Virus record (IMG/VR): IMGVR_UViG_3300031933_000215 | Span: 1-64,000 of that record | DNA length: 64,000 nucleotides | Strand: one strand, 5' to 3' | Shown here: positions 11-59,970 of the stretch, piece by piece | How positions within the stretch are numbered: position 1 is the stretch's first letter | Layout of the letters: every line of letters begins with the position of its first letter | Translations under genes and position numbers: made by a program | The notes under the pieces: model-generated | Seen by the model: only the letters and a program-made list of their open reading frames with translations | What the model was told of the DNA's origin: nothing | The model's database searches: none

Positions 11-56
11 AGGGAATAAAAGAGGCCCCGTGTGGGTGGAGCCTCTTTTTTTTTTA
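11..56. terminator. Bidirectional hairpin terminator downstream of nrdJb
   Basis: AAAAGAGGC...GCCTCTTTT inverted repeat with a T-run on +; on - it is followed by TTTTATTCCCT, the recurrent tail motif. Confidence 0.7.
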
Positions 57-61
57 GTCAG

Positions 62-793
62 TTACCCACACTTCGACCATCCGCAGTTCAGACAGGTCGG
101 ACACCCATCCAGCAGCTGAAGATCACCACCACAGGTCCCACAGTTGCCTACAGACGGCTTTTCGGTTTCTTCCGTGTCGTCTTTCGGATCAGGGGTTTCC
201 ACCGCTGGCGGTGTTTCTGGAGCCTGTACCGGCTGTGCACCTTCGATCATTTTTTCCAGCTTGATCTGACCGCCGTGTTCGTTCAGGAACCCACGACGGA
301 ACAGGATCTGTTGAATGGACCATGCAATGGCTGCCACCACGGAATCGTGGAACACTGGCTTGCCCCATTCGTTCTTACCGCACCGCACTGGCCCTTTGTC
401 CCAGGCCACTTTACGCAAGTCTTGGAGGGCTTGGGTGATGTACCCACCACGCGCCGCCAATGACAGGTTACGCATGGTCGCGGTGATCCATTGGTGTTCG
501 CTGGACAGCTGCCCGGATGGGATGAAGAACTCGATCGGCCGTTCAATGATGACGTCCTGACCGTCTACAACGCCCTCTACGGGGATGAAAGAGACCAACA
601 CATACAAACGGTGGCGTCCTTCGGCATCGTAATAGGTGACCTTCTCAGACACCGCTTCGAGGGACCCTTCTGGGCGACGCTCAATGCGGACCGTCAACGG
701 GTCGACGTCTTGACGGGGTGGTTCAACCGGAGTTTCGGCGTTCTCTTTCTTGATGTGAAAACCAACGATCTTGGAATTGATTTCTTTTGTCAT
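62..793 (-). CDS. nrdJb: Class II ribonucleotide reductase small partner subunit (NrdJb-like, TSCPD-type domain plus C-terminal Zn ribbon)
   Basis: Directly downstream of nrdJa; ends in CGTCGG...DGCPTCLNCGWSKCG, the zinc-ribbon end typical of NrdJ C-termini and of Pseudomonas-type NrdJb. Confidence 0.8.
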   Translation of the reverse strand: MTKEINSKIVGFHIKKENAETPVEPPRQDVDPLTVRIERRPEGSLEAVSEKVTYYDAEGRHRLYVLVSFIPVEGVVDGQDVIIERPIEFFIPSGQLSSEHQWITATMRNLSLAARGGYITQALQDLRKVAWDKGPVRCGKNEWGKPVFHDSVVAAIAWSIQQILFRRGFLNEHGGQIKLEKMIEGAQPVQAPETPPAVETPDPKDDTEETEKPSVGNCGTCGGDLQLLDGCPTCLNCGWSKCG

Positions 794-865
794 TGCGACT
801 GTCTTCTCGTTAATGTGTTCGCGGCCACCGTGGGGGTGGTCGTTTATGTCGGGTGGATGGGTCGA

Positions 866-2995
866 TCAGTACTTGCCGTACAGGCCTTCTTTCAGACTGT
901 CGTACAGGTTCGCCGCGACGTGTTCTTCGCCGTCGTACGTGACCTTATCGTTACCCTTGAACTCCATCTCCTCGCCGTTTTCCAACTTGAACACGTACGT
1001 GGTGTTGTCCAGGTCTTCTTCACGGACCAGCACGCCCTGGAACGCCTCGGGGTTGAAGCGGAAGGTGGTGCAACCTTTCAGACGTTGGTTGTACGCGAGC
1101 ATGTACAGGTTCTGGAACCGCTCGTACGGGAAGTCGGTCGGTACGTTCACCGTCTTCGAAATGGACGAGTCCACCCATTTCTGAGCCGCAGCCTGAATCG
1201 AGATGTGGTGTTCGGGTTCGATGTTTTCTGAGACCACGCAGTTCTTGGGCAGGTCTTCTGGCCCGGCTTCTGGGTTGACGAACGCGCGATACGCCAGCAG
1301 TTCGAACGAGACGACTTCAACCTGGGTCTTAGTCTTCTTCCCAGTCTCGATTACATTACGGTAGTACTGATGCGAGAAGGACGGTTCGATACCGTTACTG
1401 GCGTTGTTGCCCAAGGACAGACTGATGGTGCCGGTGGGCGCAATTGAGGAATGGTGAGTAAACCGGGCACCGGTCTTGGCCAGCTTCTCTACCAGCTCTG
1501 GGTCCACTTCAGCGATCCGCTCCATGTAACGGCTGTACTTGGCATGCAGAATACGGGCCGGTACCTGCTGGCCTTCCTTGTAGCCGTCTTCCACCAGACG
1601 CGGTTGTTGACGCAGGTGTTTGGCGGTCAGGCGTACCTTCTTACGCAGGGCCGGGGCCGGACCTTTCTCCAAGGCCAGTTCCAGTGCCATCTTCCAGCCT
1701 ACCAGCGCCAGCTCTTTGGTCACTTGATCGGTGAATTGGATCGAGTCCGGCTGACCGTAGGTGTAACCCAACATGGCCATGGCTGAGCCCAGGCCGAGGT
1801 AACCCATGCCGTGACGACGCTTCTCAACAATCTCACGCGCTTGTCCCTTCAACGGCAGGCCGTTGATTTCCACCACGTTGTCCAGCATGCGAGTGAAGAT
1901 GCGCACCACGTTGCGGTAACGCTCCCAATCGAAGCGGGCTTCGGGAGTGAACGGATCGATCACGAATTTGGTCAGGTTCACCGACCCCAGCAGGCAGGAA
2001 CCTTCCGGTGGCAGGGGTTGTTCACCGCAGGGGTTGGTCGCCTGAATGTCTTCACAGAACCAGTTGTTGTTCATGCGGTTGACTTCGTCAATCAACAGGA
2101 AGCCCGGCTCCGCGTAGTCGTACGTGGAGCGCATGATGGTGTCCCACAGGTCTTTGGCCTTAACCACATCCACCACCTCGCACGCCACGCGACCTTGATC
2201 GTCGTAAACGTAGTCGTCTTCCTTCACTGGCCAGTCGCGGTAGACCAGGGCGATGTCTTCGTTATCCAGGCAATCTTCTTTGATGGGGAAGGCCAGCTGC
2301 CAGTCTTCGTCTTTCTGAACCGCCTGCATGAATTCATCGGTGATCAACAGGGACAGGTTGAACTGACGCAGTCGTCCATCTTCACGTTTGGCCTGGATGA
2401 ACTCCATCACATCCGGGTGACCCACATCGAACGTGCCCATCTGGGCCCCGCGACGACCACCGGCACTGGCAACTGTGAAACACATGCGATCGAAGATGTC
2501 CATGAACGCCAGGGGTCCATTGGTTCCGGCCCCAGCGCCGCGAACGTGTGCGCCTTTATGACGAATGGTGGAGAACGCGTAGCCGATACCACAGCCCGCT
2601 TTCAATGTAATGCCCGCATCCCGGACGGACTCAAGGATATCCAACATGGAATCTTTGACAGTACGGGACACCGTACAGTTGATCAATGACACGGCCGTCT
2701 TGTGTTCGGCAGCCCCGGCGTTCGAGGTGATCCGACCGGCCGGAATGGCACCGTGTTCCATCGCCCACAGAAACTCCTTGTACCAGAAGTCCCGGAGTTC
2801 TTGGGTTTCCTCTACGTCCGCCAACGCGCGGGCCACCCGCTTGTACGTATCGGCCATGGTTTTATCAACAACATTACCGTGCCGGTCCCGCAGCTGGTAC
2901 TTGGAGCCCCAGATATCCACCGACGTATCCTGAAACGGGATATCGGAAGTGAAATTAGCGGACAAAGGTTTAGAATTTTGGGTCGATTTGGTCAT
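866..2995 (-). CDS. nrdJa: Adenosylcobalamin-dependent (class II) ribonucleotide reductase, catalytic subunit NrdJa
   Basis: PAGRITSNAG, SLINCTV, GGRRGAQM, RQFNLS, catalytic TNPCGEQPL, RRHGMG and SIAPTGTIS motifs; lacks the C-terminal part, which is encoded by the next ORF. Confidence 0.92.
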   Translation of the reverse strand: MTKSTQNSKPLSANFTSDIPFQDTSVDIWGSKYQLRDRHGNVVDKTMADTYKRVARALADVEETQELRDFWYKEFLWAMEHGAIPAGRITSNAGAAEHKTAVSLINCTVSRTVKDSMLDILESVRDAGITLKAGCGIGYAFSTIRHKGAHVRGAGAGTNGPLAFMDIFDRMCFTVASAGGRRGAQMGTFDVGHPDVMEFIQAKREDGRLRQFNLSLLITDEFMQAVQKDEDWQLAFPIKEDCLDNEDIALVYRDWPVKEDDYVYDDQGRVACEVVDVVKAKDLWDTIMRSTYDYAEPGFLLIDEVNRMNNNWFCEDIQATNPCGEQPLPPEGSCLLGSVNLTKFVIDPFTPEARFDWERYRNVVRIFTRMLDNVVEINGLPLKGQAREIVEKRRHGMGYLGLGSAMAMLGYTYGQPDSIQFTDQVTKELALVGWKMALELALEKGPAPALRKKVRLTAKHLRQQPRLVEDGYKEGQQVPARILHAKYSRYMERIAEVDPELVEKLAKTGARFTHHSSIAPTGTISLSLGNNASNGIEPSFSHQYYRNVIETGKKTKTQVEVVSFELLAYRAFVNPEAGPEDLPKNCVVSENIEPEHHISIQAAAQKWVDSSISKTVNVPTDFPYERFQNLYMLAYNQRLKGCTTFRFNPEAFQGVLVREEDLDNTTYVFKLENGEEMEFKGNDKVTYDGEEHVAANLYDSLKEGLYGKY

Positions 2996-3232
2996 TTGAT
3001 ACAGCCTTAATGATAAAGCATTTTTGGTGGTTAAGGGAAAAAATACGGCGACACGCCTTTTGAAGGATGCCGCCTGAAGAATTCGTCTGTTCGAGTTTCC
3101 TTAGGAGTACCCTTGAGCCGCTCGAACATATAATTGGCTCAAACTCATCCCATCAGGACGGGAGGTAGAATTTTACCAATGGAGTCAATAACATGTCATA
3201 TTGACTATACTTTAATGAGGAGGGAACAGCCC

Positions 3233-4093: not shown

Positions 4094-4102
4094 GGGTTGT
4101 TC

Positions 4103-4493: not shown

Positions 4494-4745
4494 ATGTCCG
4501 CTGATGTGATGATCATGATCGACGCCATGGTTCTTGAAGACCTGCTACTGACTCGCCATATTGACCGCTCGGCTCGCGCGGGTAAAACAAAGATACCTTC
4601 CCACGAAGAACAGTTGAAGGAGTACACTCGTACCCATTACGAGAACCTCGCTGAACTGCGCAAGATCGGAGGGGAGGAAGCCATTGATTTGTTGGTGACT
4701 TGTCTGCGGGAAAAGAAAACCACCGGTGATTTACTGGCCGCCTAA
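4494..4745 (+). CDS. Small hypothetical protein
   Basis: GGGAG RBS before ATG 4494; followed by a terminator. Confidence 0.6.
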   Translation: MSADVMIMIDAMVLEDLLLTRHIDRSARAGKTKIPSHEEQLKEYTRTHYENLAELRKIGGEEAIDLLVTCLREKKTTGDLLAA

Positions 4746-4747: not shown

Positions 4748-4790
4748 ACGGCATAGGAGCCTCCCATAGCGGGAGGCTCTTTTTTTTTCG
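4748..4790. terminator. Bidirectional terminator between convergent genes
   Basis: GAGCCTCCC ATAGC GGGAGGCTC hairpin; T-run on +, CTATGCCGT tail on -. Confidence 0.8.
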
Positions 4791-7470: not shown

Positions 7471-7522
7471 CCGACATAGTGCCTCCCCAAAAGGGGAGGC
7501 GGCTATGCTTATTTTTTTTTTG
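7471..7522. terminator. Bidirectional terminator
   Basis: GCCTCCCC AAAA GGGGAGGC hairpin flanked by CCGACATAG and CTATGCTT plus a T-run. Confidence 0.8.
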
Positions 7523-9188: not shown

Positions 9189-9197
9189 AAACTTTCC

Positions 9198-11864: not shown

Positions 11865-11876
11865 TATCCACCTTCC

Positions 11877-15063: not shown

Positions 15064-15927
15064 ATGTCACGCTATCAAAACCCTTTCATTGGTAATCGCG
15101 CCTATGGATTGGGACAGGCGGCTAACACGGTCGATATCTCACAGGCCGGTACCAAACAGTTCGCTCCCAACCTGGCCAACCTGGCGGCCAACACGCCGTA
15201 CGTTCGCCGTAACGTCGTGCCTTTTCTGATTGAGGCACCGCGTTTCTTCCAGTACACCAGCAACCCGGAACTTTATGTACGCTGTCTGAAGGCGTTCATT
15301 GAGAACCACACCCGCACCATCGACGGTCTGAACCAGCAGTTGACGGTTGACACCGCCGAAGCACCGGTGGGCGGTTCTGGTGAGCGGATTCAAACCGCTA
15401 CCAACGTTACCCGTGCGGTCAGCAACCCGACTCACGGTTGTTGGGAACTGCAAGGTCGTGCGATCTCCAAGTTCATCAAGTGGTGGATTCAGTACGGTAT
15501 CGGTGACGAGAACACCAAGGTACCGCTGATCGTTGCCGACGGCAACATCGCTGCTGAGAACTACGACGCCACCTTCTACGGCGCCACCATCCTGTACATC
15601 GAGCCCGACCCTACGTTCACCGACGTGGTCAGTGCTTGGCTGTCCACCAACATGTTCCCGACCGCCACGCCGGTATGGGAAGGTTCCAAAGACGCCAGCC
15701 AGCTGGGTCAGAACCTGGACATCAACGTGGAATTCACAGCCACCACCGATGTGTCTGTTGGTACTCAACTGTTTGCTCGCGACATCCTGCAGAGCCTGAA
15801 CATTGGCGGTATGAACCCCAATGAGAACCCGCTCTGGCTGGAAAACATCGCAGCCGACATCAAGGCCGCCGACAACGGTGTGGAAGGTCAGCTGGAGAAA
15901 GGTGCTTCCGAGCGCATCAGCTACTAA
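15064..15927 (+). CDS. Tail tube protein (phiKZ gp30-like)
   Basis: About 287 aa beta-rich ORF directly after the sheath; WLSTNMFP motif; strong codon bias. Confidence 0.75.
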
Positions 15928-15930: not shown

Positions 15931-15970
15931 TCGGCATAGACTTGGGGTCTCTTCGGAGACCCCAGTTTAT
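15931..15970. terminator. Terminator after tail tube gene
   Basis: CTTGGGGTCTC TTCG GAGACCCCAG hairpin with UUCG loop followed by TTTATT; TCGGCATAG on the 5' side. Confidence 0.8.
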
Positions 15971-15972
15971 TC

Positions 15973-16338
15973 GTGAATCAATCGAGGTCCGTTATGCCCA
16001 GTCAACGTGAAATCGAACGTGCGAAAGCTCGGGTGCGGCGCTCCCTGGACCGTGCGCGTGAAAACGGGTTGCTACCGCCACGGAATGCAGATAAGGCGAA
16101 CCCGCCAGCGGAAGATAAGTCGGTCCCTGCAGGTCGCAATGTCAGTGAGTTGAAAAGTCGCCCTAACCCCCCGGTCAACGAAGCCCAAAAGCCCAAGGAA
16201 GAGCAAAAGCAAGAACAGGAGATTCGGGAAGTCAGTTTCGCTAAACATGTCTCAACCCACGTATCCAAACAGAAAAACGGCCTACATGGGCAACTGGAGT
16301 CGGGAGCAAAGAACCGACTGGATTTGAAAAATCGCTAA
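15973..16338 (+). CDS. Hypothetical basic, low-complexity protein
   Basis: ORF fills the gap between the terminator and the next gene; GAGG before ATG 15997 is an alternative start. Confidence 0.5.
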   Translation: MNQSRSVMPSQREIERAKARVRRSLDRARENGLLPPRNADKANPPAEDKSVPAGRNVSELKSRPNPPVNEAQKPKEEQKQEQEIREVSFAKHVSTHVSKQKNGLHGQLESGAKNRLDLKNR

Positions 16339-16425: not shown

Positions 16426-16899
16426 ATGCGTCGTTTAATGCGGTTTAATCACAAACGTGGACAAAAACCAAAAGTGGTAATTGTCAAAGGCAACCCCGAC
16501 AAGATGGTGGGGATGGAGAAACTGGCTCAGGCTTACTATCAAGAGATCGCTAACTACCTAGAAGACATGGGGTTTAAAGTGGAGATGGATGATGGTGAAC
16601 CCAAAACCTGTCCGGACATGAACGCAATATTCTGGGTAGCCCATTCCCGTGGGGTTGATCGTGAGCGCTGCGTTCCTCCGACTGAGAAATGGCGTTTTTT
16701 GAAGTTCGGCGATTTGGAAGGGGTCATTCATCCAACGGACGCCCGCTGGCAACGGTCCATCACCAACCACACCACGTCCAAGCAACAACCCCCAAAGGAG
16801 CATTTTGTGTTTACGATCGAACAGCAAGAGGCGATCAACGCGCTTGTACGTAAGCTTTCAAAGCACCCTGATTTTAAGGACCGGTTCGTTGGTCGATAA
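16426..16899 (+). CDS. Hypothetical protein, possible alpha/beta-hydrolase-like fold
   Basis: AAGGAG RBS; VVIVKG strand and WVAHSRG nucleophile-elbow-like motif. Confidence 0.55.
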   Translation: MRRLMRFNHKRGQKPKVVIVKGNPDKMVGMEKLAQAYYQEIANYLEDMGFKVEMDDGEPKTCPDMNAIFWVAHSRGVDRERCVPPTEKWRFLKFGDLEGVIHPTDARWQRSITNHTTSKQQPPKEHFVFTIEQQEAINALVRKLSKHPDFKDRFVGR

Positions 16900-16950
16900 C
16901 GACATAAGAGGAGGGATAGTCCCTCCTCGATTTATGTTTTTTTTTTTATT
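16899..16950. terminator. Bidirectional terminator
   Basis: GAGGAGGGA TAG TCCCTCCTC hairpin; ACGACATAA on the left, TTTATGTTTTT on the right. Confidence 0.8.
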
Positions 16951-20272: not shown

Positions 20273-20418
20273 AGAGCATATAACCAGGAGTCCCTGTGGG
20301 CTCCTGTATGCCGTTTCCAGATGAAACCGATACGTTGGTCGTCTGTGATCTTTAAACCATCTTATGAAGGCCTGTAGACCGTTACAGGCGTATTAATGCA
20401 ACCCAAATAGGAATCGAC

Positions 20419-20817: not shown

Positions 20818-20819
20818 GG

Positions 20820-21240: not shown

Positions 21241-21241
21241 C

Positions 21242-21403: not shown

Positions 21404-21742
21404 CGACTCAGGAAAAAATACGCGCGGGTTATAACCTATGTGGAGTTAGCAACTTCATAGCCATGGGTATTCTCGCAGTTGTCGTAAAATCCTTGCAGTC
21501 TCCGGGTGCTGTAAGGTAACTCTTCGTGGGTTCTCTCTCTCCCTTAGCCCGGCTTCGAATTCAATACTGCCTGGGGTTCGCCCCGGGCTTTATTCCGTCA
21601 CCCTGCAAATCGAAAAGGACAACACCCATGGAAAACATCTTGGTCAATAGCAAAGATTCACTCTCCGCCTCAGAACTATGAGGCTAATCCTGTGGTGGCG
21701 ACAACCCACCCATAACCCAAAGCAACTCTAAGGAGTATACCC

Positions 21743-22628: not shown

Positions 22629-22667
22629 ACGACATAAAGGTGGGGTTTCGGCCCCACCTTTTTTTAT
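22629..22667. terminator. Terminator after phuZ
   Basis: AAAGGTGGGG TTTCGG CCCCACCTTT followed by a T-run; ACGACATA on the 5' side. Confidence 0.85.
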
Positions 22668-22678
22668 TTGGAGATTTG

Positions 22679-23188
22679 ATGATGGCCAAGAAGTCAAAGC
22701 ACGATGGTCTTGACGCGTTATTGGCCAAGGAGTTGGGGCTGGAACTACAGACGCAGACATTGCCGTTGAAGAAAGTGCAGACCATGGTCAAAGAAGCCAA
22801 CGGTTTGTATTTCGCCTTTGTGATCGATGGTTATTACTACTACGATACGGTTGAGTCGTGGGCTGGTAGTTTGGGTTGTCGTGTAAAACCCAAGCGGTTC
22901 TTGTTGGAGCCCCGCGTTCGTCAGCGACTGGAACAGCGTCATTACCTCCGATGGTACTTCCACTATGGAACGGCGTTGTATCGGGTACAGATTGCCAAAC
23001 CCAAAGACCTGTTCGATCGCTTGTGGTTTCAACCATGCGACGACAACCCACGGTCGACCAACGTTCTCATTGAGGTTGAATCCATGTTTCTGCGAAAGAA
23101 ACCATTGATGCAACTGCGTGAATCGAAACTGCCTTGGTACGATATTCCTGATCACTGGGAACCTGTAGAAATGAAAAAGCGAGCATAG
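22679..23188 (+). CDS. Hypothetical protein
   Basis: GGAG RBS; followed by a hairpin plus TATGCCGT. Confidence 0.65.
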   Translation: MMAKKSKHDGLDALLAKELGLELQTQTLPLKKVQTMVKEANGLYFAFVIDGYYYYDTVESWAGSLGCRVKPKRFLLEPRVRQRLEQRHYLRWYFHYGTALYRVQIAKPKDLFDRLWFQPCDDNPRSTNVLIEVESMFLRKKPLMQLRESKLPWYDIPDHWEPVEMKKRA

Positions 23189-23325
23189 ACCCTCCCCTGA
23201 TTTGGGGAGGGCTTTATGCCGTTTCTTTTTTTTTGGTTACGGTGCACCGGTGATGGTGCAATGCAAGTAATTAAAAGTTTATATTATCTCAGTGTAATTT
23301 AGTAGAGTTTAGTAAAGGACCCATC

Positions 23326-24333
23326 ATGTTTTATAGCACTGAGTTTAAACGTAATGAAAAACAATGGTTAGTTTTTATAATACTCCATATAAAAACTAAC
23401 TTTAAATATATTGGATATACAAACAGCCCTAAGAGAACACTGATTAATTTTTATTATAAACTAAAACGCGGAACTCACACTAACAAACATATACAAAATG
23501 CATATATGGACGACCCTAGATTGGAGAGAATTTATTTTGGGGTCGATTCTGAAATAGAAGCTATAAAATTAAAATCAATGCTAATTCAACGATACGCTAA
23601 ACGTGGTGAACTTTTTAACATTGATAAGTTAAATAACCACAAAGACAATGACCCTAGGGTTGACATTATTGTAGACAAGGTTGAAATGGACGATAGTGTT
23701 AAATTACCTCCAATGGACAAAAGGAGGTATGAAAGATTTATAGAGTTGCGTTCGAAACCATTCGACACCTTAGCAACCCCGAGTGGTTTACATGTACTGA
23801 CAAATACTGACATACATGCAAAAAGTAGAGTCGTGGGTGTGTATGTCATATACCACCCCAAAACAGGGAAGTATTATGTTGGTAGTACATCTAACCTTTA
23901 TTCAAGAATTGTAGCTCACCTTTCGGGATTAAGAAAAAACAATCACGAAAATAGTTCTCTTAACTTGGCTTTTAAGTCTGATCCGCAGATTGAAATTATT
24001 TGTTATAAGACTGATGACCGAGAGAAAGCATTTGAGTTAGAGCAGGACTTGATGGATAGTAATAAACATAATTTATTCAATAAAGCGTTAGACTCTAAGA
24101 ATAACTTCCACGGTTATATTTACAAGGGAAAACCAATGCCTGACTGGATACGCGAAAAAATTAGCAATTCGAGTAGAATACGTACCGATTTAAAACGAAC
24201 TCCAATTAATATTGATGGTGTTGTTTATTCATCAGTTAGTGAAGCTAGTAGACAGCTCGGTATCAATAAACGAACACTTTTCAGAAGAATACATTCTAAA
24301 ACACATCACAACTACACCCTGCATGTTAATTAA
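23326..24333 (+). mobile_element. Free-standing homing endonuclease gene with two GIY-YIG domains and a NUMOD3/NUMOD1-type DNA-binding tail
   Basis: VFIILHIKTNFKYIGYT and GVYVIYHPKTGKYYVGST, both followed by ...H.N..(L/I)..A; IREKISNS and DGVVYSSVSEASRQLGI; markedly AT-rich relative to flanks. Confidence 0.85.
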
Positions 24334-24385
24334 CATAAACCCACTGGCGGAGACCAGTGGGTTTTGTATGCATTTTTTTTGTTTG

Positions 24386-26718: not shown

Positions 26719-27181
26719 TACGAAGAACGTCGTATTGGCCATCGACAAACGTGAGTTACTCTACATGCACCCCGGTCTGGTTGACCGGGGGGCTATGCTC
26801 GGAATCCCGGAAGACGTGACTTACGAGTTGGTGCTGACCATGACCGACGTGTTTAATTTACACGTGAGCTTGTCCGAAGAGCTTTCAATGGTGGAAGACG
26901 AGATGTACAACATCTTCGAGTTCATGACCGACCCGTACCTCACCTCCGAGGCCGGGATGGATTCCGCTGAAGGGTCGCGATTGGACGACTATTGTCGGGA
27001 GGTGTACGAGTCATTGCAGACCCTGCGGGGGATGATTCCCCTGAACGTCACCAACCTGCAGTACCTGTCGCACTTTTTGGAAAGTCGCTTTCCCCACCTG
27101 TTCTACGTGGGTGGGGTGATGCACACCGGACGTGTCCCTAACGACTACATGTTTAACGAAAAATACTTCCTGTTCATGTGA
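26702..27181 (+). CDS. Hypothetical acidic protein, array member 3
   Basis: Overlaps the previous stop codon; VVLAID start. Confidence 0.7.
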   Translation: MSEPANTKNVVLAIDKRELLYMHPGLVDRGAMLGIPEDVTYELVLTMTDVFNLHVSLSEELSMVEDEMYNIFEFMTDPYLTSEAGMDSAEGSRLDDYCREVYESLQTLRGMIPLNVTNLQYLSHFLESRFPHLFYVGGVMHTGRVPNDYMFNEKYFLFM

Positions 27182-29395: not shown

Positions 29396-29602
29396 CACCG
29401 ATAGGGGACCTCCGGGTCCCCGCATCTTTATTTTTTTTTAGTCCCCTTTGGAGATAGGAAAAACTACGCGAGGTGTCGATAGTCTAGGAGGCAACTTCTT
29501 TGTATAAACAGACCGCGTTAAACCGAAATCAAGGACGGTTAGCTTCCTCTTTGGGAAGTCATTGGCTCCAAAGTACAAAGGGATTACATAAGGAGAGTCA
29601 TC

Positions 29603-30019: not shown

Positions 30020-30153
30020 GCGTCTCCACGTGTGTTCCTAAGCCCTGTAAACATGCGTCTTCGCCGCCCCCGTCGTGGGGCGGTTCTTTTTTGCCGTCGC
30101 ACCGGTGAAACAAATACGCCCTCACCCAATGTGATAGGCAGAGGAGAGAAACC

Positions 30154-32280
30154 ATGGAAAACCCATTTGTACTACCCGACGACAATTATCAACGCGACCT
30201 GAACATCATTGCCGGCTATTACGACGATGCCGCCAAGTACCTGCAACTTCAGACCGGTCAGTCGTTTGATACCTGTTTGGATTATGTGCGGTCTCGGGTA
30301 CATCCGGGAAAACCCAACGGATTCAACGATCCCCGAGCGTTGGTGTTGTCGAAAGACGAAAACGGCGATCGGGAACCAACCACCCAAAGCTTCATGCAGT
30401 TCTTGACCCGTGTGACCAAGAACAACCTGCTGTTGTCGCCCAGCATGGCGGCCTACATGCCGGAAGATCAGAAAGCCTCCACCCATGCAAAGTACATCGA
30501 AGAAGGGGTGGGTAAACGGAAGAAAGTCAAAGGGCAGATGTTCGAGGCCGAACGCAACGGCGACGACGAATTGGCGCTGGTGAAGAAGGGTGAACAGAAT
30601 AACCTGAAGATCAACAACAACTCTTACTCCGGTGCGACGGTGTCAACCGCCACCATCCTTTATTACAAGTCGACCCACAGCTCGCTGACGTCCACGTGTC
30701 GGACGGCCACGTCCTACGCCAATGCCGCCAACGAAAAGTTCATCGCCGGGAACCGCCATTACTACAACCCGGAAATTACCAAGTCGAACATTCTATCACT
30801 GATTAATGGGGCCGACCTTGAACTGATTGATCAAGCGTGTCGGGAATTCGATCTGGTATACCCGACCCCCAAGGACGTGGTGGACTGCGTGCGGTATTCG
30901 AGTGTGCAGTATTGGGACGGTGAGGAGCACCTCCAATCCATTATGAACATGGCTGAAACCATGACCCCCACTGAACGGGCGGCGGTGGTGTATGTTGCCG
31001 ACCTGTACCACCTCCACAAACACAACCCCAAGTTTGTGGTGAACTTCTTGATGGAGCTGTCGTCGGTGGGAAGTCCCGATGCTGGGGTGACGGACGAAGA
31101 GTTCAAGTCGTGTGACGACGATGTGCAGATGCTCGCAAACTTCCTGTGTTACGATCTAGTGGACGGTCGGAAAACGGAGACACTACTGGAGGAAGCGCCA
31201 GAGGTGTACGAGATGATCAAGAGCAGCGGCTTGAACGTCATCAACGTCCTACACAAATACAAGTCAATGATCCACGCATTCTGGTTGACCAAGACCGTGC
31301 CCAGTTCTATTCACGCGTTCCCCAGCGCGTACCGCAAGGCAGCGGTGGTATCGGACACCGACTCGACCATGTTCACCATGCAGTACTGGGTCGAACAGTG
31401 CTTCGGTCACGTCAGTTACGCGGTGGAAGCCCAACGCGTGGTGTTCGCCATGGTATTCTTGGTCAGCGAACTCATGCTACACATTCTGGCGATCCAGTCG
31501 GCAAACATGGGCGTGTCGAAGAAGAAGCTGCGCCTGTTGGCCATGAAGAACGAGTTCTACTTTGCCGTGTTGTCAATGACGACTCGGTCCAAGCACTACT
31601 ACGCTTCTCAGGACGCGCAAGAAGGCTTGATGTTCCCCAAACCCAAGCTGGAAGTAAAAGGCGTGGGTCTGCGTGATTCAAAGGTTCCCAAGAAGATCAA
31701 CGATGGGGCCAAGGATCTGATGGAAGACATCATCGGTACCATTAAGGCCGAAGAAAAGCTGAACATGCGGGAGATCTTGAAGCAGGTGGCGGACATTGAA
31801 CGGGAGATCGCGTCGAGTGTCCAGAGCGGTTCGTACGAGTACATGACGTCCGGTCAGGTAAAGTCCAAAGAGTCTTACAAGAACCCGGAAGTGTCAAACT
31901 ACATGCAGTACGAGTTGTGGCGGGATGTGTTCGCCCCGTTCTTGGGTAAGACCAAAGAGCCGCCGTACTCGGTGGTTAAGGTCTCACTGGTGGCCAGCAA
32001 CAAGACGGAGATCGAGGAGTGGTGCAAACGGATGGGCAACGACAGATTGGCCACGCGCCTCAAAGAATGGTTGCTTCAGCGCCGGCGTACCAACCTGTCA
32101 ACCCTGTTGATCCCACAGGAAGTGGTGGAAACCACCGGGATACCGAAAGAGATCATCGCCGGGGTCGACACCCGCAAACTCATCTTTAACACCATGGGGG
32201 TATACTACCTGATGTTGGAGTCGTTGGGAATCTTCAAGCAAGACAAGAAACTCGCACGACTGTTGTCCGACTACTATTAA
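30154..32280 (+). CDS. Family B DNA polymerase, polymerase-domain subunit (phiKZ gp50-like)
   Basis: K...N..Y helix motif (NLKINNNSYSG), catalytic VVSDTDS, KHYY, LEVKGVGL. Confidence 0.85.
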   Translation: MENPFVLPDDNYQRDLNIIAGYYDDAAKYLQLQTGQSFDTCLDYVRSRVHPGKPNGFNDPRALVLSKDENGDREPTTQSFMQFLTRVTKNNLLLSPSMAAYMPEDQKASTHAKYIEEGVGKRKKVKGQMFEAERNGDDELALVKKGEQNNLKINNNSYSGATVSTATILYYKSTHSSLTSTCRTATSYANAANEKFIAGNRHYYNPEITKSNILSLINGADLELIDQACREFDLVYPTPKDVVDCVRYSSVQYWDGEEHLQSIMNMAETMTPTERAAVVYVADLYHLHKHNPKFVVNFLMELSSVGSPDAGVTDEEFKSCDDDVQMLANFLCYDLVDGRKTETLLEEAPEVYEMIKSSGLNVINVLHKYKSMIHAFWLTKTVPSSIHAFPSAYRKAAVVSDTDSTMFTMQYWVEQCFGHVSYAVEAQRVVFAMVFLVSELMLHILAIQSANMGVSKKKLRLLAMKNEFYFAVLSMTTRSKHYYASQDAQEGLMFPKPKLEVKGVGLRDSKVPKKINDGAKDLMEDIIGTIKAEEKLNMREILKQVADIEREIASSVQSGSYEYMTSGQVKSKESYKNPEVSNYMQYELWRDVFAPFLGKTKEPPYSVVKVSLVASNKTEIEEWCKRMGNDRLATRLKEWLLQRRRTNLSTLLIPQEVVETTGIPKEIIAGVDTRKLIFNTMGVYYLMLESLGIFKQDKKLARLLSDYY

Positions 32281-32341
32281 CGACATAAAGCCTTTCTCTA
32301 AGCGCCACCGTGGACTGCTTAGAGGAAGGCCCTTATTGCGT
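32280..32341. terminator. Bidirectional terminator between convergent genes
   Basis: GCCTTTCTCTAAGC...GCTTAGAGGAAGGC long hairpin; tail motif on both strands. Confidence 0.7.
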
Positions 32342-36423: not shown

Positions 36424-36460
36424 CTAAGAGAGGGTCTTCGGGCCCTCTCTTTTTTTGTTC
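36424..36460 (+). terminator. Terminator after chmA
   Basis: AAGAGAGGG TCTTCGGG CCCTCTCTT followed by a T-run. Confidence 0.8.
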
Positions 36461-38315: not shown

Positions 38316-38317
38316 TC

Positions 38318-38935: not shown

Positions 38936-38997
38936 CGGTAATAAGGAAAGGGCCCCGATCCGGGCCCTTTCTATGCCGTTGGATTGAAACTTTTTTA

Positions 38998-39396: not shown

Positions 39397-39487
39397 CATG
39401 CGGCGGTGGGGACCATACCCACCGCTTTCCTATTTTTTTTTTAGTCCACGGAAGGATAGTATGGTAACCCGCAAAGGAGAAACAGTC

Positions 39488-48566: not shown

Positions 48567-48607
48567 GCGGCATAGAGGGAGTCCGTTGGGACTCCCTCTT
48601 TTTTTGT
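48567..48607. terminator. Bidirectional terminator
   Basis: AGAGGGAGTCC GTT GGGACTCCCTCT hairpin; T-run on +, CTATGCCGC on -. Confidence 0.8.
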
Positions 48608-54536: not shown

Positions 54537-54585
54537 CCACGGAGGACGGGGGAGGGTGACAGCTCCCCCGTTGTTGTACCCAACA

Positions 54586-57153
54586 ATGAAATCATTACTG
54601 ACGCTCGACGTTTATTCTCACGGGGTCCGCATCAGTGGATACACCCGTGAGACCTTTCGTATCATTGCTGTTTTTTTGGAACGACTGGCGCTAAAAGAAC
54701 CACGCCACATTCCACAGGAACGGCGAATGGTCATGGAACTGAAGAAACGGTTCTACGGCCTAACCGATTCCCGCAAGGAATCTTTCATCCACCGCTACCA
54801 GCTTGAAGAGTTTCTGCTCTACTTGAAAGACCGTGGATTGGAAGGGCGATTTGAGATCAACCATATCGACGCCCCGGTACCCACCCCAGCCACGTTTGAT
54901 ATTTACGATCACTATGAAACCCGTGGATACCAGATTCCCATCGTTGAGTTCATGACCACCCCCGATAAGCGCTCTTGCCGCCTGGACCTCCAGACCGGCA
55001 AGGGGAAGGCCGAGACACTCTATTCTCGAATTAAAGTGCCTGGTGGTTGGTCTACAATGGGTGAGATGGAGGTTGGTACGAAAGTCACAGCATGGGATGG
55101 AACCACCACCCATGTAACGGGAGTATACCCACAGGGAACCACTCCCGTTTATAGGGTAACGTTTTGGGACGGACGTCATGTTGATGTTTGTCCTGAGCAT
55201 CTCTGGAAAGCGTTCTATGTGAACACTGTACCCCATAGACGGTGGCGGGTTATTGATACCTTGGAACTCAAAAGACTAAGTGAAATGCCCAATCCACGGG
55301 TATATGTTCCTTTGTGTCAATCCGAAGACGGCCCTGAGGTTGATGTCACAATACCGCCATACACACTGGGCGTACTTATTGGAGACGGTAACCTAACCGG
55401 AACCGGTATAAATATATTCAAACCAGATAACGAGCTGTTCGAAAATATTAGGGAGGAATTATTACCGGGTCACGAGTTACGCGACTCTCTAAAGAAGCCG
55501 GGTTTACGTTCCTTGGTAAATGCCAACGGAGGTGAAAACCTATACCGTCGCTACCTCAAAGAAATGGACATTGACGGAACCTATTCTTGGGAAAAATACA
55601 TTCCCCAGAATTACCTCCACGGATCTACGGAACAACGGTGGGCATTACTACAGGGATTGATGGACACAGACGGGACAGTCAACACCAGAGAAACCGGTGG
55701 GGCTGTGTCGTTTAACTCCACCAGTCGTCGTTTGGCGGGGCAAGTTCAATACCTTGTGCGTTCTCTTGGCGGTATTGCCTCAATCAGTGAACGCAATACA
55801 CAATACACATACAACGGAGAAAAATGTCAGGGACGTAAGTCTTACGATGTTAACATCCGTCACCCGAAACAACGAAAACTATTCCGCCTACCACGGAAGT
55901 TAGAACGTATACCTGAAACTAACCAATATTCGGAGGATTTAAAACTCAGAGTTCGTTCGGTTGAATACCTTGGTGAGGAACCAACTCAATGCATTTCAAT
56001 CGATCATCCGGAGCGCCTGTATGTAACCAATGACTTCATTGTGACACACAACACCTATTGCGCCTTACGGTCGGTGGCCACCCTGGGCGTTCGGACGGTG
56101 GTGATGGTGTCGCCCAAATACTTCGGCATTTGGGAAAAAGCCCTGAAAGAAACCTACAAAGACATAGATGGACGTTACTGTACGGTTTCCGGTTCCGCCG
56201 AGTTGCGGGCGTTGATTGAGAAGGGCGTGGAAGGAGACCTGGACTACGATGTGATCATTGTCTCCAACGTAACCTACCGCAGCTACCTGGAATCGTACGA
56301 GCGGTTCGGTGAGGCGATCACCAGCATCGGCTATTTGGTCCCGCCCCCACGGTTTCATGAAGCCTTGGGCGCTGGGGTGCAAATCAACGATGAGTTCCAA
56401 GACGACCCCGGTCTGGTGTTCCGCACGGATGTTTACACGAATGTCAGAAAACAGTTGTACTTGTCCGCCACGCCATTCACTGGGAACGAGTTCGTCACCC
56501 GCATGATCGACGTGATGCTCCCCAAAGAGACGTCCTGTCCCTTGCCGGAATACGACCAGTACATCAATGTGATCGGACTGATGTACCACGACCCGGACGT
56601 TAAACGCAAAGACTACCTGACGCCCTTTAAGAACACCTACAATCACACCCGGTACGAGAAACGCCTGCTCAAAGCCAAGCGTCGATTGGAACGGTACAAG
56701 CGGATGGTGTTCAAGGTCATCAACGGCATTTACATCAAAGACCGGGAACCGGGCCAGAAGCTACTGGTTCTGTGCGCCACGGTGGACTTCATCAAACACC
56801 TGACCAAGGAGTTGAAGCTGAAGTACCCCGACTTGACCATCGGTGAGTTCGTGGCGGGGTCCAACCCCAAGACGCTGCAAACCAACGACATCACGGTGTC
56901 GACCATCAAGTCGGCCGGGACCGGTCAAGACATCATTGACTTAAGAGAAGTACTGCTGCTGCAAGCAACGGATTCCAAGAAGGACAACATCCAAATCCTG
57001 GGCCGTCTGAGACGCATGAAAAACTGGCCAGAACACACACCACGCATGACGTATATGGTGTGTATGGACATCCCACAGCAGATTCGTTACTTCAAAAATA
57101 AGAAGGGTCATTTCGATGGACGCGTCGTGTCCCATCGGGTGATGCGTATCTAG
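54586..57153 (+). CDS. SF2 (UvsW-like) helicase precursor containing an intein (phiKZ gp75-like)
   Basis: Walker A LQTGKGK|T split by the intein; QINDEF, LYLSATP, SAGTGQDI, QILGRLRR motifs. Confidence 0.88.
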   Translation: MKSLLTLDVYSHGVRISGYTRETFRIIAVFLERLALKEPRHIPQERRMVMELKKRFYGLTDSRKESFIHRYQLEEFLLYLKDRGLEGRFEINHIDAPVPTPATFDIYDHYETRGYQIPIVEFMTTPDKRSCRLDLQTGKGKAETLYSRIKVPGGWSTMGEMEVGTKVTAWDGTTTHVTGVYPQGTTPVYRVTFWDGRHVDVCPEHLWKAFYVNTVPHRRWRVIDTLELKRLSEMPNPRVYVPLCQSEDGPEVDVTIPPYTLGVLIGDGNLTGTGINIFKPDNELFENIREELLPGHELRDSLKKPGLRSLVNANGGENLYRRYLKEMDIDGTYSWEKYIPQNYLHGSTEQRWALLQGLMDTDGTVNTRETGGAVSFNSTSRRLAGQVQYLVRSLGGIASISERNTQYTYNGEKCQGRKSYDVNIRHPKQRKLFRLPRKLERIPETNQYSEDLKLRVRSVEYLGEEPTQCISIDHPERLYVTNDFIVTHNTYCALRSVATLGVRTVVMVSPKYFGIWEKALKETYKDIDGRYCTVSGSAELRALIEKGVEGDLDYDVIIVSNVTYRSYLESYERFGEAITSIGYLVPPPRFHEALGAGVQINDEFQDDPGLVFRTDVYTNVRKQLYLSATPFTGNEFVTRMIDVMLPKETSCPLPEYDQYINVIGLMYHDPDVKRKDYLTPFKNTYNHTRYEKRLLKAKRRLERYKRMVFKVINGIYIKDREPGQKLLVLCATVDFIKHLTKELKLKYPDLTIGEFVAGSNPKTLQTNDITVSTIKSAGTGQDIIDLREVLLLQATDSKKDNIQILGRLRRMKNWPEHTPRMTYMVCMDIPQQIRYFKNKKGHFDGRVVSHRVMRI
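55009..56052 (+). mobile_element. Class 3 intein (348 aa) with LAGLIDADG endonuclease
   Basis: Starts with Ala (AETLYSRIK), ends in THN before Thr; WCT triad in EHLW, TQCISI and VTHN; LGVLIGDG and LQGLMDTDG motifs; lower GC than flanks. Confidence 0.9.
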
Positions 57154-57222
57154 TTTGGGCGTCCTTCGGGACGCCCTTTATTCCGCCAGCTCGGCATAAC
57201 CAACGACAACGGAGCAATACCC

Positions 57223-58840: not shown

Positions 58841-58894
58841 ACGCACCATGGGTCCTTCCGAGGGCCCATGTTTTATTCCGTCAAGGGAGTTGTC

Positions 58895-59509
58895 ATGATC
58901 ATAGCCGAACGCGAAGAAGAAGGACGGTACGTCGGGCTGGTAGAGATGCCAGTCCCCGAATCGGTTCGGATGAAGAACCCAGCAAAACCAACCAAAGATT
59001 TTTACGAACTCATGCAATGGCTCGGGGTTCCTCAAGCGGAATCGGTCATCAGCATTGAGTTTGCCAGAGACCTCGCAACCAAGGGAAAGAACCACGATGA
59101 TCGTCCTGGGTACCACACCTGGATGCCAACTATCGTGCGCTTCCCGGATCGGGTTGTTATTTGGGCCATCACCTTACGTAAACCTGTACACAAACACTGG
59201 GTCATCGGCATGTGGTACGGGTACCCTCAATGCTGCATCAAAGAACATCTAATCGACATCGAACATTACCGTCGAAGTGGATTTACCGACAACCCCATCG
59301 CCAAGAAACGGAAAGAAAACCACCCGTACCGTGGTGGGCCCGTACCTTGCAACGCATGCCTGACCGACCCTTATCCCGATTTTAAGGAACAGGTCAAACG
59401 CCACCGCCAGTGTCCAATCCCTTACCCTACCGCAGTTCCTGGGAAGACCTGGTTTGGTGCGGTGCTGTGTTACGGTCGCGGTGAGCTGAAACCTTGGGGC
59501 CGACGTTAA
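58895..59509 (+). CDS. Hypothetical Cys-motif protein (GYPQCC...PCxxC), paralog B
   Basis: WVIGMWYGYPQCC and VPCNAC; GGGAG RBS. Confidence 0.7.
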   Translation: MIIAEREEEGRYVGLVEMPVPESVRMKNPAKPTKDFYELMQWLGVPQAESVISIEFARDLATKGKNHDDRPGYHTWMPTIVRFPDRVVIWAITLRKPVHKHWVIGMWYGYPQCCIKEHLIDIEHYRRSGFTDNPIAKKRKENHPYRGGPVPCNACLTDPYPDFKEQVKRHRQCPIPYPTAVPGKTWFGAVLCYGRGELKPWGRR

Positions 59510-59561
59510 ACAATCCGTCCCACGGGACGCTTTATATACCACAAAACGAGGAGTAGCAATA

Positions 59562-59885
59562 ATGAGCAACGATGAGAACAAAACCCTGGACGACGCTTAC
59601 GACGCCATCCGTGCCGAGCTATTGAAACACATCGGTATGAACGGTGGGTTCATCAGCCAAGGCGCCTTGATGGCCGTCATGTTCAACGGCGACGGTGCCG
59701 TGAATGCCGCTGGCAGTCTGATCATCCAGGTTCTGGAACGGATGGTTGAGGAAGGCGATGTGATGGAGATGAAACTCAAACACAAAGCCTTGGGTGGGTT
59801 TGGTCAACCGTACTACGTGGACCACAACACCGAGATCCATTTCACCGACAACAGTCAGAAGCGTACCCAGACCCGGAGTGTTTAA
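59562..59885 (+). CDS. Hypothetical protein, possible winged-helix
   Basis: GAGGAG RBS; helix-rich N-part ending in a short beta hairpin. Confidence 0.65.
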   Translation: MSNDENKTLDDAYDAIRAELLKHIGMNGGFISQGALMAVMFNGDGAVNAAGSLIIQVLERMVEEGDVMEMKLKHKALGGFGQPYYVDHNTEIHFTDNSQKRTQTRSV

Positions 59886-59888
59886 TCA

Positions 59889-59970
59889 AAGGCACCCTTC
59901 GGGGTGCCGTCTATGCCCTTTCTTTTTTTTTTGGTCAACGACATAAAGCCCGCCCCGAAGGGCGGGTGTT
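59889..59970. terminator. Back-to-back terminators of convergent genes
   Basis: GGCACCC TTCG GGGTGCC then CTATGCCC and a T-run on +; CCCGCCC CGAA GGGCGGG then CTTTATGTCGT on -. Confidence 0.8.

What the first reader, a model, noticed from the sequence alone, without database searches (positions are those of the whole stretch)
11..59970. Recurrent hairpin + UAU(G/U)(C/U)CGU tail: a candidate phage-specific terminator or RNA 3'-end signal
About 18 intergenic GC-rich hairpins are followed, a few nt 3' of the stem, by the same 8-mer, which in several + strand cases replaces the usual poly-U. On +: 845 TATGTCGG, 20307 TATGCCGT, 21591 TATTCCGT, 23215 TATGCCGT, 32334 TATTGCGT, 38972 TATGCCGT, 57179 TATTCCGC, 58874 TATTCCGT, 59912 TATGCCCT. 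On - (seen on + as ACG(G/A)(C/A)ATA-like): 11, 4748, 7471, 15931, 16899, 22629, 32280, 48567, 59938. In most cases the hairpin-then-tail orientation matches a gene that has just ended. The stems differ while the tail is conserved, which points to sequence-specific recognition, for example by the phage non-canonical RNAPs, a processing nuclease, or an mRNA export factor of the phage nucleus. An alternative is that these are late promoters, since the phiKZ late consensus is TATG.
Basis: partly seen in the sequence, partly recalled or inferred. Interest (0 to 1): 0.78.

Follow-up and report, generated by a model that had tools for sequence, protein, structure and literature searches.

The report
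Known jumbo-phage terminator motif, new phage
The recurring GC hairpin followed by TAT(G/T)(C/T)CGT is real, and it matches the transcription-stop signal already mapped by RNA sequencing in the giant phages phiKZ and 201phi2-1; here it appears in an uncultivated relative, and how the short tail works is still unknown.

Summary
All 18 listed sites exist, and about nine more were found. After compact GC hairpins, TATKYCG occurs in 10 of 56 flanks against 0.12% expected (p = 2e-19).

The window is the first 64 kb of a 231.8-kb metagenomic nucleus-forming jumbo phage (chimallivirus), syntenic with phiKZ and Noxifer. The motif is already published. ONT-cappable-seq of phiKZ defined 61 terminators sharing hairpin + YTTATKYYGT (Putzeys 2024), and 201phi2-1 has the same motif. 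A covariance model trained only on phiKZ terminators recovers the window's sites.

Gene context favours a terminator over a promoter:
- 10 of 12 strict sites follow a same-strand gene end.
- All 7 convergent junctions carry the motif; no divergent junction does.
- The hairpins fold better as RNA on the tail strand.
- Orthologous junctions in relatives keep the tail while the stems are replaced.

The extended tail is enriched in the phiKZ, Noxifer, PhiPA3 and Ea35-70 lineages. It is absent from Goslar, FBKp24, T4 and E. coli samples.

Verdict: a new member of a known kind. The function of the tail is unresolved. One tentative lead is that strong tails without a U-run are rare at the ends of early-promoter units (p = 0.013).

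The parts
11..55 (-). Terminator after the ribonucleotide-reductase-like gene 62-793(-). Hairpin 21-46, tail TATTCCCT at 18->11, and a T10 run at 46-55 on the + strand.
   Evidence: The hairpin is 3.6 kcal/mol more stable on the - strand because of a G.U wobble. Gene confirmed by PHROG.
821..852 (+). Hairpin 821-843 with tail TATGTCGG at 845-852. It is antisense to both neighbouring - strand genes, so it is an exception or mirror copy.
4748..4788 (-). Two-way terminator between 4494-4745(+) and the terminase gene 4791-6965(-). Hairpin 4757-4779. The - strand has tail TATGCCGT at 4755->4748. The + strand has T9 at 4780-4788.
   Evidence: R1 hit at E = 0.035. Noxifer has the same element after its terminase gene.
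7471..7521 (.). Two-way terminator at a convergent junction. Hairpin 7481-7500. The - strand has tail TATGTCGG at 7478->7471. The + strand has TATGCTTA at 7504-7511 followed by T10 at 7512-7521.
   Evidence: R1 hits on both strands.
15931..15975 (.). Hairpin 15943-15964 with a UUCG loop. The + strand tail is TATTCGTG at 15968-15975, after gene 15064-15927(+). A mirror copy TATGCCGA lies at 15938->15931.
16899..16947 (.). Two-way terminator at a convergent junction. Hairpin 16908-16928. The - strand has tail TATGTCGT at 16906->16899. The + strand has TATG at 16933 followed by T11.
   Evidence: Both flanking genes are supported (and the codon score).
20285..20314 (+). Hairpin 20285-20306 with tail TATGCCGT at 20307-20314, and no U-run.
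21569..21598 (+). Hairpin 21569-21588 with a UUCG loop and tail TATTCCGT at 21591-21598. It closes a 950-nt stretch with no called gene.
   Evidence: The hairpin is 4.0 kcal/mol more stable on the + strand.
22629..22672 (.). Hairpin 22636-22661. The + strand has T7ATTT, the terminator of the tubulin gene 21769-22623. The - strand has a mirror copy TATGTCGT at 22636->22629, antisense to the genes.
23187..23234 (+). Hairpin 23190-23211, tail TATGCCGT at 23215-23222, then T9 at 23226-23234.
   Evidence: R1 hit at E = 8e-4.
24330..24380 (.). Two-way terminator. Hairpin 24340-24361. The + strand has TATGCATT followed by T8. The - strand has TATGTTAA at 24337->24330. This element came in with the homing-endonuclease insertion.
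26770..26801 (+). Hairpin 26770-26790 with TATGCTCG at 26794-26801. The stem and tail are conserved in relative L005.
32280..32341 (.). Two-way terminator between the DNA polymerase gene 30154-32280(+) and 32341-32784(-). Long hairpin 32290-32331. The + strand has tail TATTGCGT at 32334-32341. The - strand has tail TATGTCGT at 32287->32280.
   Evidence: Orthologous junctions in L005, L006 and Noxifer keep the tails with unrelated stems.
38946..38979 (+). Hairpin 38946-38971 with tail TATGCCGT at 38972-38979. An early-type promoter follows about 20 nt downstream.
   Evidence: Orthologues in L005 and Noxifer keep the tail with different stems.
48567..48605 (.). Two-way terminator. Hairpin 48574-48599. 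The - strand has tail TATGCCGC at 48574->48567. The + strand has T7 at 48599-48605.
57157..57186 (+). Hairpin 57157-57176 with a UUCG loop and tail TATTCCGC at 57179-57186.
58847..58881 (+). Hairpin 58847-58870 with tail TATTCCGT at 58874-58881, 14 nt before the next start codon.
   Evidence: The hairpin is 4.5 kcal/mol more stable on the + strand.
59891..59932 (+). Hairpin 59891-59908, tail TATGCCCT at 59912-59919, then T10 at 59923-59932.
   Evidence: R1 hit at E = 0.014.
59938..59966 (-). Hairpin 59949-59966 with tail TATGTCGT at 59945->59938, after gene 59970-60392(-).
   Evidence: This is the best R1 hit, E = 6e-5.
29404..29439 (+). Terminator of the U-run type. Hairpin 29404-29421, then CTTTAT followed by T9.
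30064..30097 (+). Terminator of the U-run type. Hairpin 30064-30083, then TTCTTTTTTGCCGT.
   Evidence: The U-run type is conserved in L005 and Noxifer.
36426..36456 (+). Terminator of the U-run type after the nuclear-shell (chimallin) gene. Hairpin 36426-36451, with T7 at 36450-36456 overlapping the last two stem bases.
   Evidence: The type is conserved in L005 and L006 with compensatory stem changes.
39403..39442 (+). Terminator of the U-run type. Hairpin 39403-39425, then TTTCCTA followed by T10.

Best explanation
These are the transcription terminators of a phiKZ-like, nucleus-forming jumbo phage.

Shown in this phage's relatives and inferred here: as RNA, each site folds into a compact GC stem-loop. 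The first 8-10 transcribed bases after the stem read (Y)UUAU(G/U)(C/U)CGU. RNA 3' ends form at these sites.

Inferred: the U/A-rich start of the tail acts as a short, weak RNA:DNA hybrid, like the proximal part of a U-tract. The conserved KYCGU adds a sequence-dependent pause or release signal suited to the phage's own multisubunit RNA polymerases.

Where genes converge, one hairpin serves both directions. It carries either a tail on each side or a tail on one side and a U-run on the other. When the mirror-image sequence ACGRCATA lies 5' of the stem, it can pair with the tail and lengthen the helix.
For: 1. Identity with a mapped signal. The phiKZ terminator consensus from ONT-cappable-seq is hairpin + YTTATKYYGT, found in 61 terminators, with 6 two-way regions between convergent genes. 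201phi2-1 has the same motif A. Its partner motif B elongates the stem, and eight terminators worked in vivo.

2. Formal cross-genome test. A covariance model built only from 20 phiKZ sites gives 19 hits in the window at E <= 10. Seventeen of them are the listed intergenic hairpins, the best at E = 6e-5.

3. Gene context.
- 10 of 12 strict sites lie 25 nt or less after a same-strand stop codon.
- 7 of 7 convergent junctions carry the motif.
- 0 of 7 divergent junctions carry it. The small flanking genes were checked by PHROG.

4. RNA-level signal. 8 of 9 one-sided hairpins are more stable on the tail strand, including all 4 that have a G.U wobble. UUCG loops lie on the sense strand.

5. Evolution. 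At orthologous junctions in relatives (37-76% protein identity) the stems are replaced, while the tail type or U-run type is kept. Noxifer has the same element after its terminase gene.

6. Lineage specificity. The extended tail is enriched at hairpins in phiKZ, Noxifer, PhiPA3 and Ea35-70. It is absent from the E. coli and T4 samples.
Against: - There are no RNA data for this phage. Only DNA metagenomes hold it.
- ONT 3' ends cannot separate termination from processing. The papers do not say where the 3' end lies relative to the tail.
- Three strong copies (845+, 15931-, 22629-) face away from any gene end.
- The role of KYCGU is pure inference.
- 201phi2-1 terminators also stop host RNA polymerase, so the tail may not be needed for termination as such.
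- Half of the strict sites could also serve a downstream gene.
Confidence: 0.8

Rival explanations
1. The tails are late promoters. The phage's non-virion RNA polymerase starts at the G of TATG, and the hairpin is only the previous gene's terminator that happens to sit next to it.
For: The phiKZ late promoter consensus is (-3)TATG(+1). Six of the 12 strict sites are followed within 14-171 nt by a same-strand gene. Examples are 58874, 14 nt before a ribosome-binding site and ATG, and 57179.
Against: - Five strict sites face the 3' end of an opposite-strand gene, where a promoter would only make antisense RNA. One more, 22636-, faces antisense into the gene it abuts. A further one, 23215, was convergent before a mobile gene was inserted.
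- No divergent junction has the motif.
- Position 4 is T in 7 of 21 sense sites, and T is a poor start base. This last point is general knowledge.
- Candidate hairpin-free TATG sites upstream of late genes mostly read TATGA, not TATGY.
- In phiKZ the motif was derived from 3' ends.
Confidence: 0.07
2. The element is an RNA processing and stability signal. A nuclease cuts in the single-stranded tail, and the hairpin then protects the new 3' end. The polymerase itself does not stop there.
For: - Sequencing 3' ends cannot tell processing from termination.
- A conserved single-stranded sequence next to a stem is typical of nuclease or protein recognition.
- A 3'-UTR-derived stable RNA is reported for phiKZ gene 298.
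Against: - Related terminators blocked downstream reporter expression in uninfected cells. That is more easily explained by termination.
- The mirror arm often pairs with the tail, which would hide a single-stranded site.
- The tail starts with the U-rich bases expected of an intrinsic terminator.
Confidence: 0.1
3. The element works at the DNA level. It would be a palindromic binding or cleavage site, or a small mobile repeat, and not an RNA signal.
For: Many sites are near-palindromes of the form ACGRCATA - stem - TATGYCGT. A homing-endonuclease gene was inserted exactly at one such site.
Against: - The stems differ between sites and between orthologues, so this is not a repeated mobile sequence.
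- G.U wobbles and UUCG loops favour one strand.
- Many sites have the tail on one side only.
- Placement follows gene ends and strand.
Confidence: 0.03

Closest known systems
phiKZ conserved terminator motif, 5'-BCCYCCCCHWWDGGGRRGGBYTTATKYYGT-3' (Putzeys et al. 2024, microLife, PMC10914365)
   Same: - GC stem-loop followed at once by YTTAT(G/T)(C/T)(C/T)GT.
- Lies after gene ends, and is two-way at convergent genes.
- The genomes are syntenic and share the phage family.
- A covariance model trained on phiKZ finds the window's sites.
   Different: - Stems here are more varied. CCYCCCC/GGGRRGG is common but not the rule.
- Position 6 is nearly always C here, where phiKZ has C or T. This tracks 53% versus 37% GC.
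- Long T9-T11 runs accompany many + strand sites here.
- No RNA ends have been mapped for this phage.
201phi2-1 terminator motifs A and B (PMC11512511)
   Same: Motif A is reported to resemble the phiKZ motif. Motif B lengthens the hairpin, as the mirror arm ACGRCATA does here. The terminators are active in vivo.
   Different: The logos themselves could not be read, because figures and supplements are not held. The comparison therefore rests on the paper's wording.
Canonical bacterial intrinsic terminator (GC hairpin plus a 7-9 nt U-tract)
   Same: GC hairpin, a U-rich start to the 3' flank, a position after genes, and two-way use.
   Different: Only 2-4 U residues, followed by a conserved AUKYCGU in place of a U-run. 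The E. coli sample shows 0 of 26 flanks with TATG.
phiKZ late promoter (-3)TATG(+1), read by the non-virion RNA polymerase (PMC7618050)
   Same: It shares the TATG core.
   Different: The promoter has no required hairpin and no KYCGT extension on record. The tail allows T at position 4 and sits where no gene follows.
Sequence-specific viral terminators: vaccinia early U5NU signal and the T7 class II ATCTGTT signal (from general knowledge, as analogies only)
   Same: A short conserved sequence helps stop a virus-encoded RNA polymerase.
   Different: Those signals act without a hairpin. There is no homology, and no factor is known here.

Membership tests
phiKZ-type (chimallivirus) terminator motif | A GC-rich stem-loop directly followed by YTTATKYYGT | tested here: met
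   Logo from 21 sense sites. Enrichment p = 2e-19. The phiKZ-trained covariance model R1 finds 17 of the window's hairpins among its 19 hits.
phiKZ-type (chimallivirus) terminator motif | Lies downstream of genes in the sense direction, and is two-way between convergent genes | tested here: met
   10 of 12 strict sites follow a same-strand stop codon. 7 of 7 convergent junctions carry the motif.
phiKZ-type (chimallivirus) terminator motif | The host genome is a phiKZ-like phage with a nuclear shell and its own multisubunit RNA polymerases | tested here: met
   The chimallin gene at 34508-36403 is 46.7% identical at protein level to Noxifer's. Gene order matches phiKZ and Noxifer, including the RNA polymerase subunit genes. 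PhuZ tubulin was confirmed by Pfam.
phiKZ-type (chimallivirus) terminator motif | RNA 3' ends map at the element during infection | not testable with these tools
   Only DNA metagenome runs hold this phage. The phage is uncultivated.
Canonical intrinsic terminator | A U-tract of about 7-9 nt directly after the stem | tested here: not met
   Tail-only sites 20307, 21591, 32334, 38972, 57179 and 58874, and all - strand sites, have at most 2-4 U residues followed by AUKYCGU. A separate subset (29404, 30064, 36426, 39403, and the + sides of 4757 and 48574) does meet this feature.
phiKZ late promoter | TATG with transcription starting at the G, upstream of a late gene | tested here: inconclusive
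   The TATG core is present in 14 of 21 sites. Only 6 of 12 strict sites precede a same-strand gene, and 5 face an opposite gene's 3' end. RNA 5' ends are not testable here.

The most novel reading that the evidence does not exclude
The phage may use two kinds of terminator for its two RNA polymerases. In this reading the UAUGYCGU tail is a stop signal specific to the non-virion polymerase, which transcribes middle and late genes. It would work because it mimics that enzyme's own TATG promoter element. The sigma-like subunit, which stays on the enzyme, would re-bind the TATG and pause the polymerase just after the hairpin, much like sigma-dependent pausing in bacteria. Units transcribed by the virion polymerase from the early promoter would end mostly at U-run or U-rich tails instead.

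Support so far:
- Strong tails without a U-run end 4 of 35 early-promoter units against 29 of 83 other units, across eight genome pieces (Fisher p = 0.013).
- In the window, every - strand terminator (late and structural genes, plus the reductase-like gene 62-793) is tail-only.
- In all five single-hairpin convergent junctions, the U-run faces the early-promoter unit.

The association between U-runs and early units was not seen outside the window.
Probability: 0.15. Interest if true: 0.75.

Novelty: new member of a known kind. Interest (0 to 1): 0.3.

Why it matters
For this window the motif is useful annotation. It marks the ends of transcription units in an uncultivated subsurface jumbo phage, and it separates them from the early promoters, which also turn out to be recognisable.

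More broadly, the same 8-10-nt tail persists across phage genera with 37-57% GC that infect different hosts, and it is absent from E. coli and T4 terminators. That pattern suggests the tail is tuned to the phage-encoded polymerases or to another conserved phage factor. How these very divergent polymerases terminate has not been studied biochemically. The motif gives a defined template for such a study. Its overlap with the TATG promoter core is a concrete lead that can be tested.

Tried and rejected
- RNA evidence for this phage. The run search returned only DNA metagenomes. The single read-laying run was therefore spent on related strains. Its variant table was cut, so it gave no per-hairpin substitutions, though it did reveal an insertion and a deletion.
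- Supplementary tables of the two ONT-cappable-seq papers (TSS and TTS coordinates) are not held. I could not measure the distance from the 3' end to the tail or the TSS/tail overlap in phiKZ. The Ceyssens 2014 paper is not held either.
- The MAFFT alignment of phiKZ terminators gave a poor consensus fold of only 5 pairs. I supplied a 6-pair structure by hand for the model.
- TAT[GT] alone is not specific. The T4 sample shows it in 6 of 20 flanks because its U-tracts read TTTTATT. Only TATG or the extended tail should be used.
- The link between U-runs and early units looked strong by eye. The automatic test gave p = 0.08 in the window and nothing in phiKZ, Noxifer or PhiPA3.
- The idea that the T-runs are part of a promoter on the other strand was rejected. 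The spacing from the A-run to TAT is about 26 nt, against about 9 nt in the early promoters.
- tRNA and Rfam scans found no tRNA and only one known RNA family, a group I intron elsewhere in the window, and nothing at the hairpin sites.

Full report
WHAT THE WINDOW IS

The 64-kb window has 53% GC. It equals positions 1-64000 of IMG/VR contig IMGVR_UViG_3300031933_000215, which is 231,818 bp. It is found only in DNA metagenomes from gas-well, rock, subsurface and freshwater samples.

It encodes a nuclear-shell protein (chimallin, 34508-36403+) that is 46.7% identical to that of Pseudomonas phage Noxifer and 39% identical to phiKZ's. Its gene order follows the left arm of phiKZ and Noxifer:
- terminase 4791-6965(-)
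- structural genes 7524-12797(-)
- tail sheath 12938-15025(+)
- PhuZ tubulin 21769-22623(+)
- DNA polymerase 30154-32280(+)
- RNA polymerase subunit genes 36486-37931, 49061-50245, 51621-52541 and 52566-54536

The window therefore comes from an uncultivated chimallivirus, a phage that transcribes its genome with two polymerases of its own.

THE OBSERVATION

Every one of the 18 listed 8-mers is present and abuts a GC-rich stem-loop.

The pattern TATKYCGT occurs 14 times against 6.4 expected, and no shuffle reaches 14. Ten of the 14 sit at hairpins.

Enrichment tracks hairpin strength. TAT[GT] lies at the 3' edge of 13 of 28 hairpins at or below -18 kcal/mol and of 13 of 55 hairpins between -18 and -15 kcal/mol. 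The background is 4.3%, and weak hairpins show only that.

I also ran a test that does not use the motif to pick hairpins. I took perfect stems of at least 7 bp with at least 5 GC pairs and anchored each flank at the last GC pair. Of 56 flanks, 16 have TATG (p = 5e-19) and 10 have TATKYCG (p = 2e-19).

The logo from 21 sense sites is (Y)(T)(T/C)-T-A-T-(G14/T7)-(C14/T6)-C15-G13-T15. About nine further sites were found. Several + strand sites indeed have no U-run after the tail.

IT IS A PUBLISHED MOTIF

Putzeys et al. 2024 mapped RNA 3' ends in phiKZ by ONT-cappable-seq. They report that most of its intrinsic-type terminators, 61 regions in all, share 5'-BCCYCCCCHWWDGGGRRGGBYTTATKYYGT-3'. They describe this as a stem-loop followed by a TTAT region and report six two-way terminator regions between convergent genes.

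The 201phi2-1 study finds a terminator motif A (n = 59) that 'strongly resembles' it. It also finds a motif B that co-occurs with A and lengthens the stem, and it shows that eight terminators work in a reporter assay in the uninfected host.

Scanning the genomes myself, I find the same hairpin-plus-tail in phiKZ and Noxifer, for example directly after the Noxifer terminase gene, as in the window.

As a formal test, I built a covariance model from 20 phiKZ sites only and ran it over the window without filters. It returned 19 hits at E <= 10. Seventeen of them are the intergenic hairpins discussed here. The best are 59937-59970(-) at E = 6e-5 and 23186-23226(+) at E = 8e-4.

TERMINATOR OR PROMOTER?

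I made a gene map and checked the small genes at the key junctions with PHROGs.

Of the 12 strict sites:
- 10 lie within 25 nt after a same-strand stop codon.
- One closes a 950-nt stretch without genes.
- One is antisense.
- Only 6 are followed by a same-strand gene within 200 nt. One of those six genes is a recent insertion.

All 7 convergent junctions carry the element, usually on both strands. None of the 7 divergent junctions has it.

Position 4 is T in a third of the sites. Hairpin-free TATG sites upstream of late genes mostly continue with A rather than C or T (judged by eye).

Real promoters in the window look different. An A-rich stretch followed by (A/G)AC(C/A)TATAT(C/T)A(C/T) recurs in intergenic DNA. 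It matches the phiKZ early promoter seen upstream of the phiKZ chimallin gene and elsewhere in phiKZ, Noxifer and PhiPA3.

RNA LEVEL, NOT DNA LEVEL

Eight of nine hairpins that carry a tail on one side only fold more stably on the tail strand. All four that contain a G.U wobble do so, by 1.7-4.5 kcal/mol. UUCG-type loops lie on the sense strand.

Many sites are near-palindromes, with ACGRCATA 5' of the stem mirroring the tail. This arrangement serves the second direction at convergent genes. At co-directional genes it can extend the helix, as described for motif B of 201phi2-1.

EVOLUTION

In two IMG/VR relatives (chimallin 70% and 63% identical) and in Noxifer, the orthologous junctions keep a hairpin plus tail while the stem sequences are unrelated. 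Examples are the junctions after the 38312-38935 orthologue and after the phiKZ gp52-like gene.

The terminators after chimallin and after 29603-30019 stay of the U-run type in those of L005, L006 and Noxifer where an orthologue was found, with compensatory stem changes.

Across the family, the extended tail is enriched at hairpins in some lineages and not in others:
- Enriched: phiKZ, Noxifer, PhiPA3 and Ea35-70.
- Weakly present: RSF1 and the two IMG/VR relatives.
- Not seen in 40-kb samples: Goslar, FBKp24 and Bacillus phage AgentSmith.
- Not seen in controls: T4 and E. coli K-12.

TAT[GT] alone is not diagnostic, because AT-rich U-tracts such as T4's contain TATT.

HOW IT PROBABLY WORKS

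Shown in relatives: RNA 3' ends form at these elements, and related terminators block read-through even with host polymerase.

Inferred here: the elements do the same job in this phage. The hairpin forms in the nascent RNA. The 2-4 U residues plus A-U at the start of the tail give a short weak hybrid.

Speculative: the KYCGU part sets a pause or release point for the phage polymerases.

A tentative pattern came out of the analysis. Strong tails without a U-run end 4 of 35 units that start at an early-type promoter, against 29 of 83 other units, across eight genome pieces (p = 0.013). In the window, every - strand terminator is tail-only; these genes are late and structural by synteny, apart from the reductase-like gene 62-793. 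In the five single-hairpin convergent junctions the U-run faces the early unit. The converse link between U-runs and early units reaches only p = 0.08 in the window and is not seen in the other genomes. I therefore offer the two-terminator idea only as a hypothesis.

VERDICT

The signal is already described for this phage family, so this is a new member of a known kind. The open question is what the conserved tail does and for which polymerase.

Noticed in passing
window 4450, 6998, 12838, 16388, 19884, 23280, 34420, 38995, 43909, 49007 (+ strand): A recurrent intergenic motif: an A-rich stretch followed by (A/G)AC(C/A)TATAT(C/T)A(C/T). It matches the phiKZ early promoter, for example AAAAAAATTTGAGATTTATATTAC before the phiKZ chimallin gene, and similar motifs in Noxifer and PhiPA3. 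These are probably the early promoters read by the virion RNA polymerase.
   Followed up: partly
window 23225-24375: A free-standing GIY-YIG homing-endonuclease gene (23326-24333, Pfam GIY-YIG plus the I-TevI DNA-binding domain) with its own promoter-like motif and terminator. The 1149-bp block is absent from related strains in runs X4 and X6. The joint lies between two T-runs, so it was inserted into a terminator's U-run.
   Followed up: partly
window 50246-51620: A group I intron (Rfam RF00028, 51163-51534, 69.7 bits) with an HNH/NUMOD endonuclease ORF (50249-51241). It lies between two pieces of a non-virion RNA polymerase subunit gene (49061-50245 and 51621-52541).
   Followed up: partly
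window 54556-57153: This 865-aa protein sits at the position of the phiKZ helicase gene. It carries LAGLIDADG/Hom_end homing-endonuclease domains at residues about 349-435, which suggests an intein.
   Followed up: no
window 21744-21772: The phuZ tubulin gene seems broken in this assembly. A good start (ribosome-binding site plus ATG at 21744, encoding MTVKTRLYA) is out of frame with the main ORF at 21769-22623. Related strains (X3, X4, X6) have 61 extra bases exactly at 21771/21772 that would join the two frames. This is either a deletion variant or an assembly collapse.
   Followed up: partly
window 20818-21768: A 950-nt stretch with no ORF of coding character but several very stable hairpins. 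These include a 49-nt near-perfect palindrome at 20941-20989 (-27 kcal/mol) and a hairpin at 21140-21169 (-22 kcal/mol). Relative X6 has 320 extra bases at 21648. These may be non-coding RNAs.
   Followed up: no
window 43058-43065, and hairpin-free TATG sites upstream of 12938, 12797(-), 21769, 25183(-) and 62676(-): TATGTCGT without a strong hairpin lies 49 nt before gene 43107. A similar GTATGTCATC occurs at the orthologous Noxifer position. Other hairpin-free TATG sites before late genes mostly read TATGA. These are candidate middle or late promoters.
   Followed up: no
window 26767-26801 and L005 about 1330-1366: A hairpin followed by TATGCTCGG whose ATG is in frame with gene 26702-27181. 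The stem and the following codons (MLG.PE) are conserved in relative L005. The gene may start at this ATG, directly at the foot of the hairpin.
   Followed up: no
window 46-60, 29431-29445, 39433-39446, 23226-23240, 59923-59937: The long T9-T11 runs after hairpins are followed by AGTC three times, or by GGT(T/C)A. I have no explanation for this.
   Followed up: no
window 20280-20314 and 23184-23223: In run X4, short contigs from other genomes match only the hairpin plus tail at these two sites and then run into unrelated sequence. Co-occurring relatives apparently carry near-identical terminators in other contexts.
   Followed up: no
window 3038-3074 (- strand): A hairpin followed by TATTTTTT lies in a divergent region, 43 nt upstream of the start of gene 866-2995(-). 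It may be a 5'-leader attenuator of the kind reported as 5'UTR-derived small RNAs in 201phi2-1.
   Followed up: no
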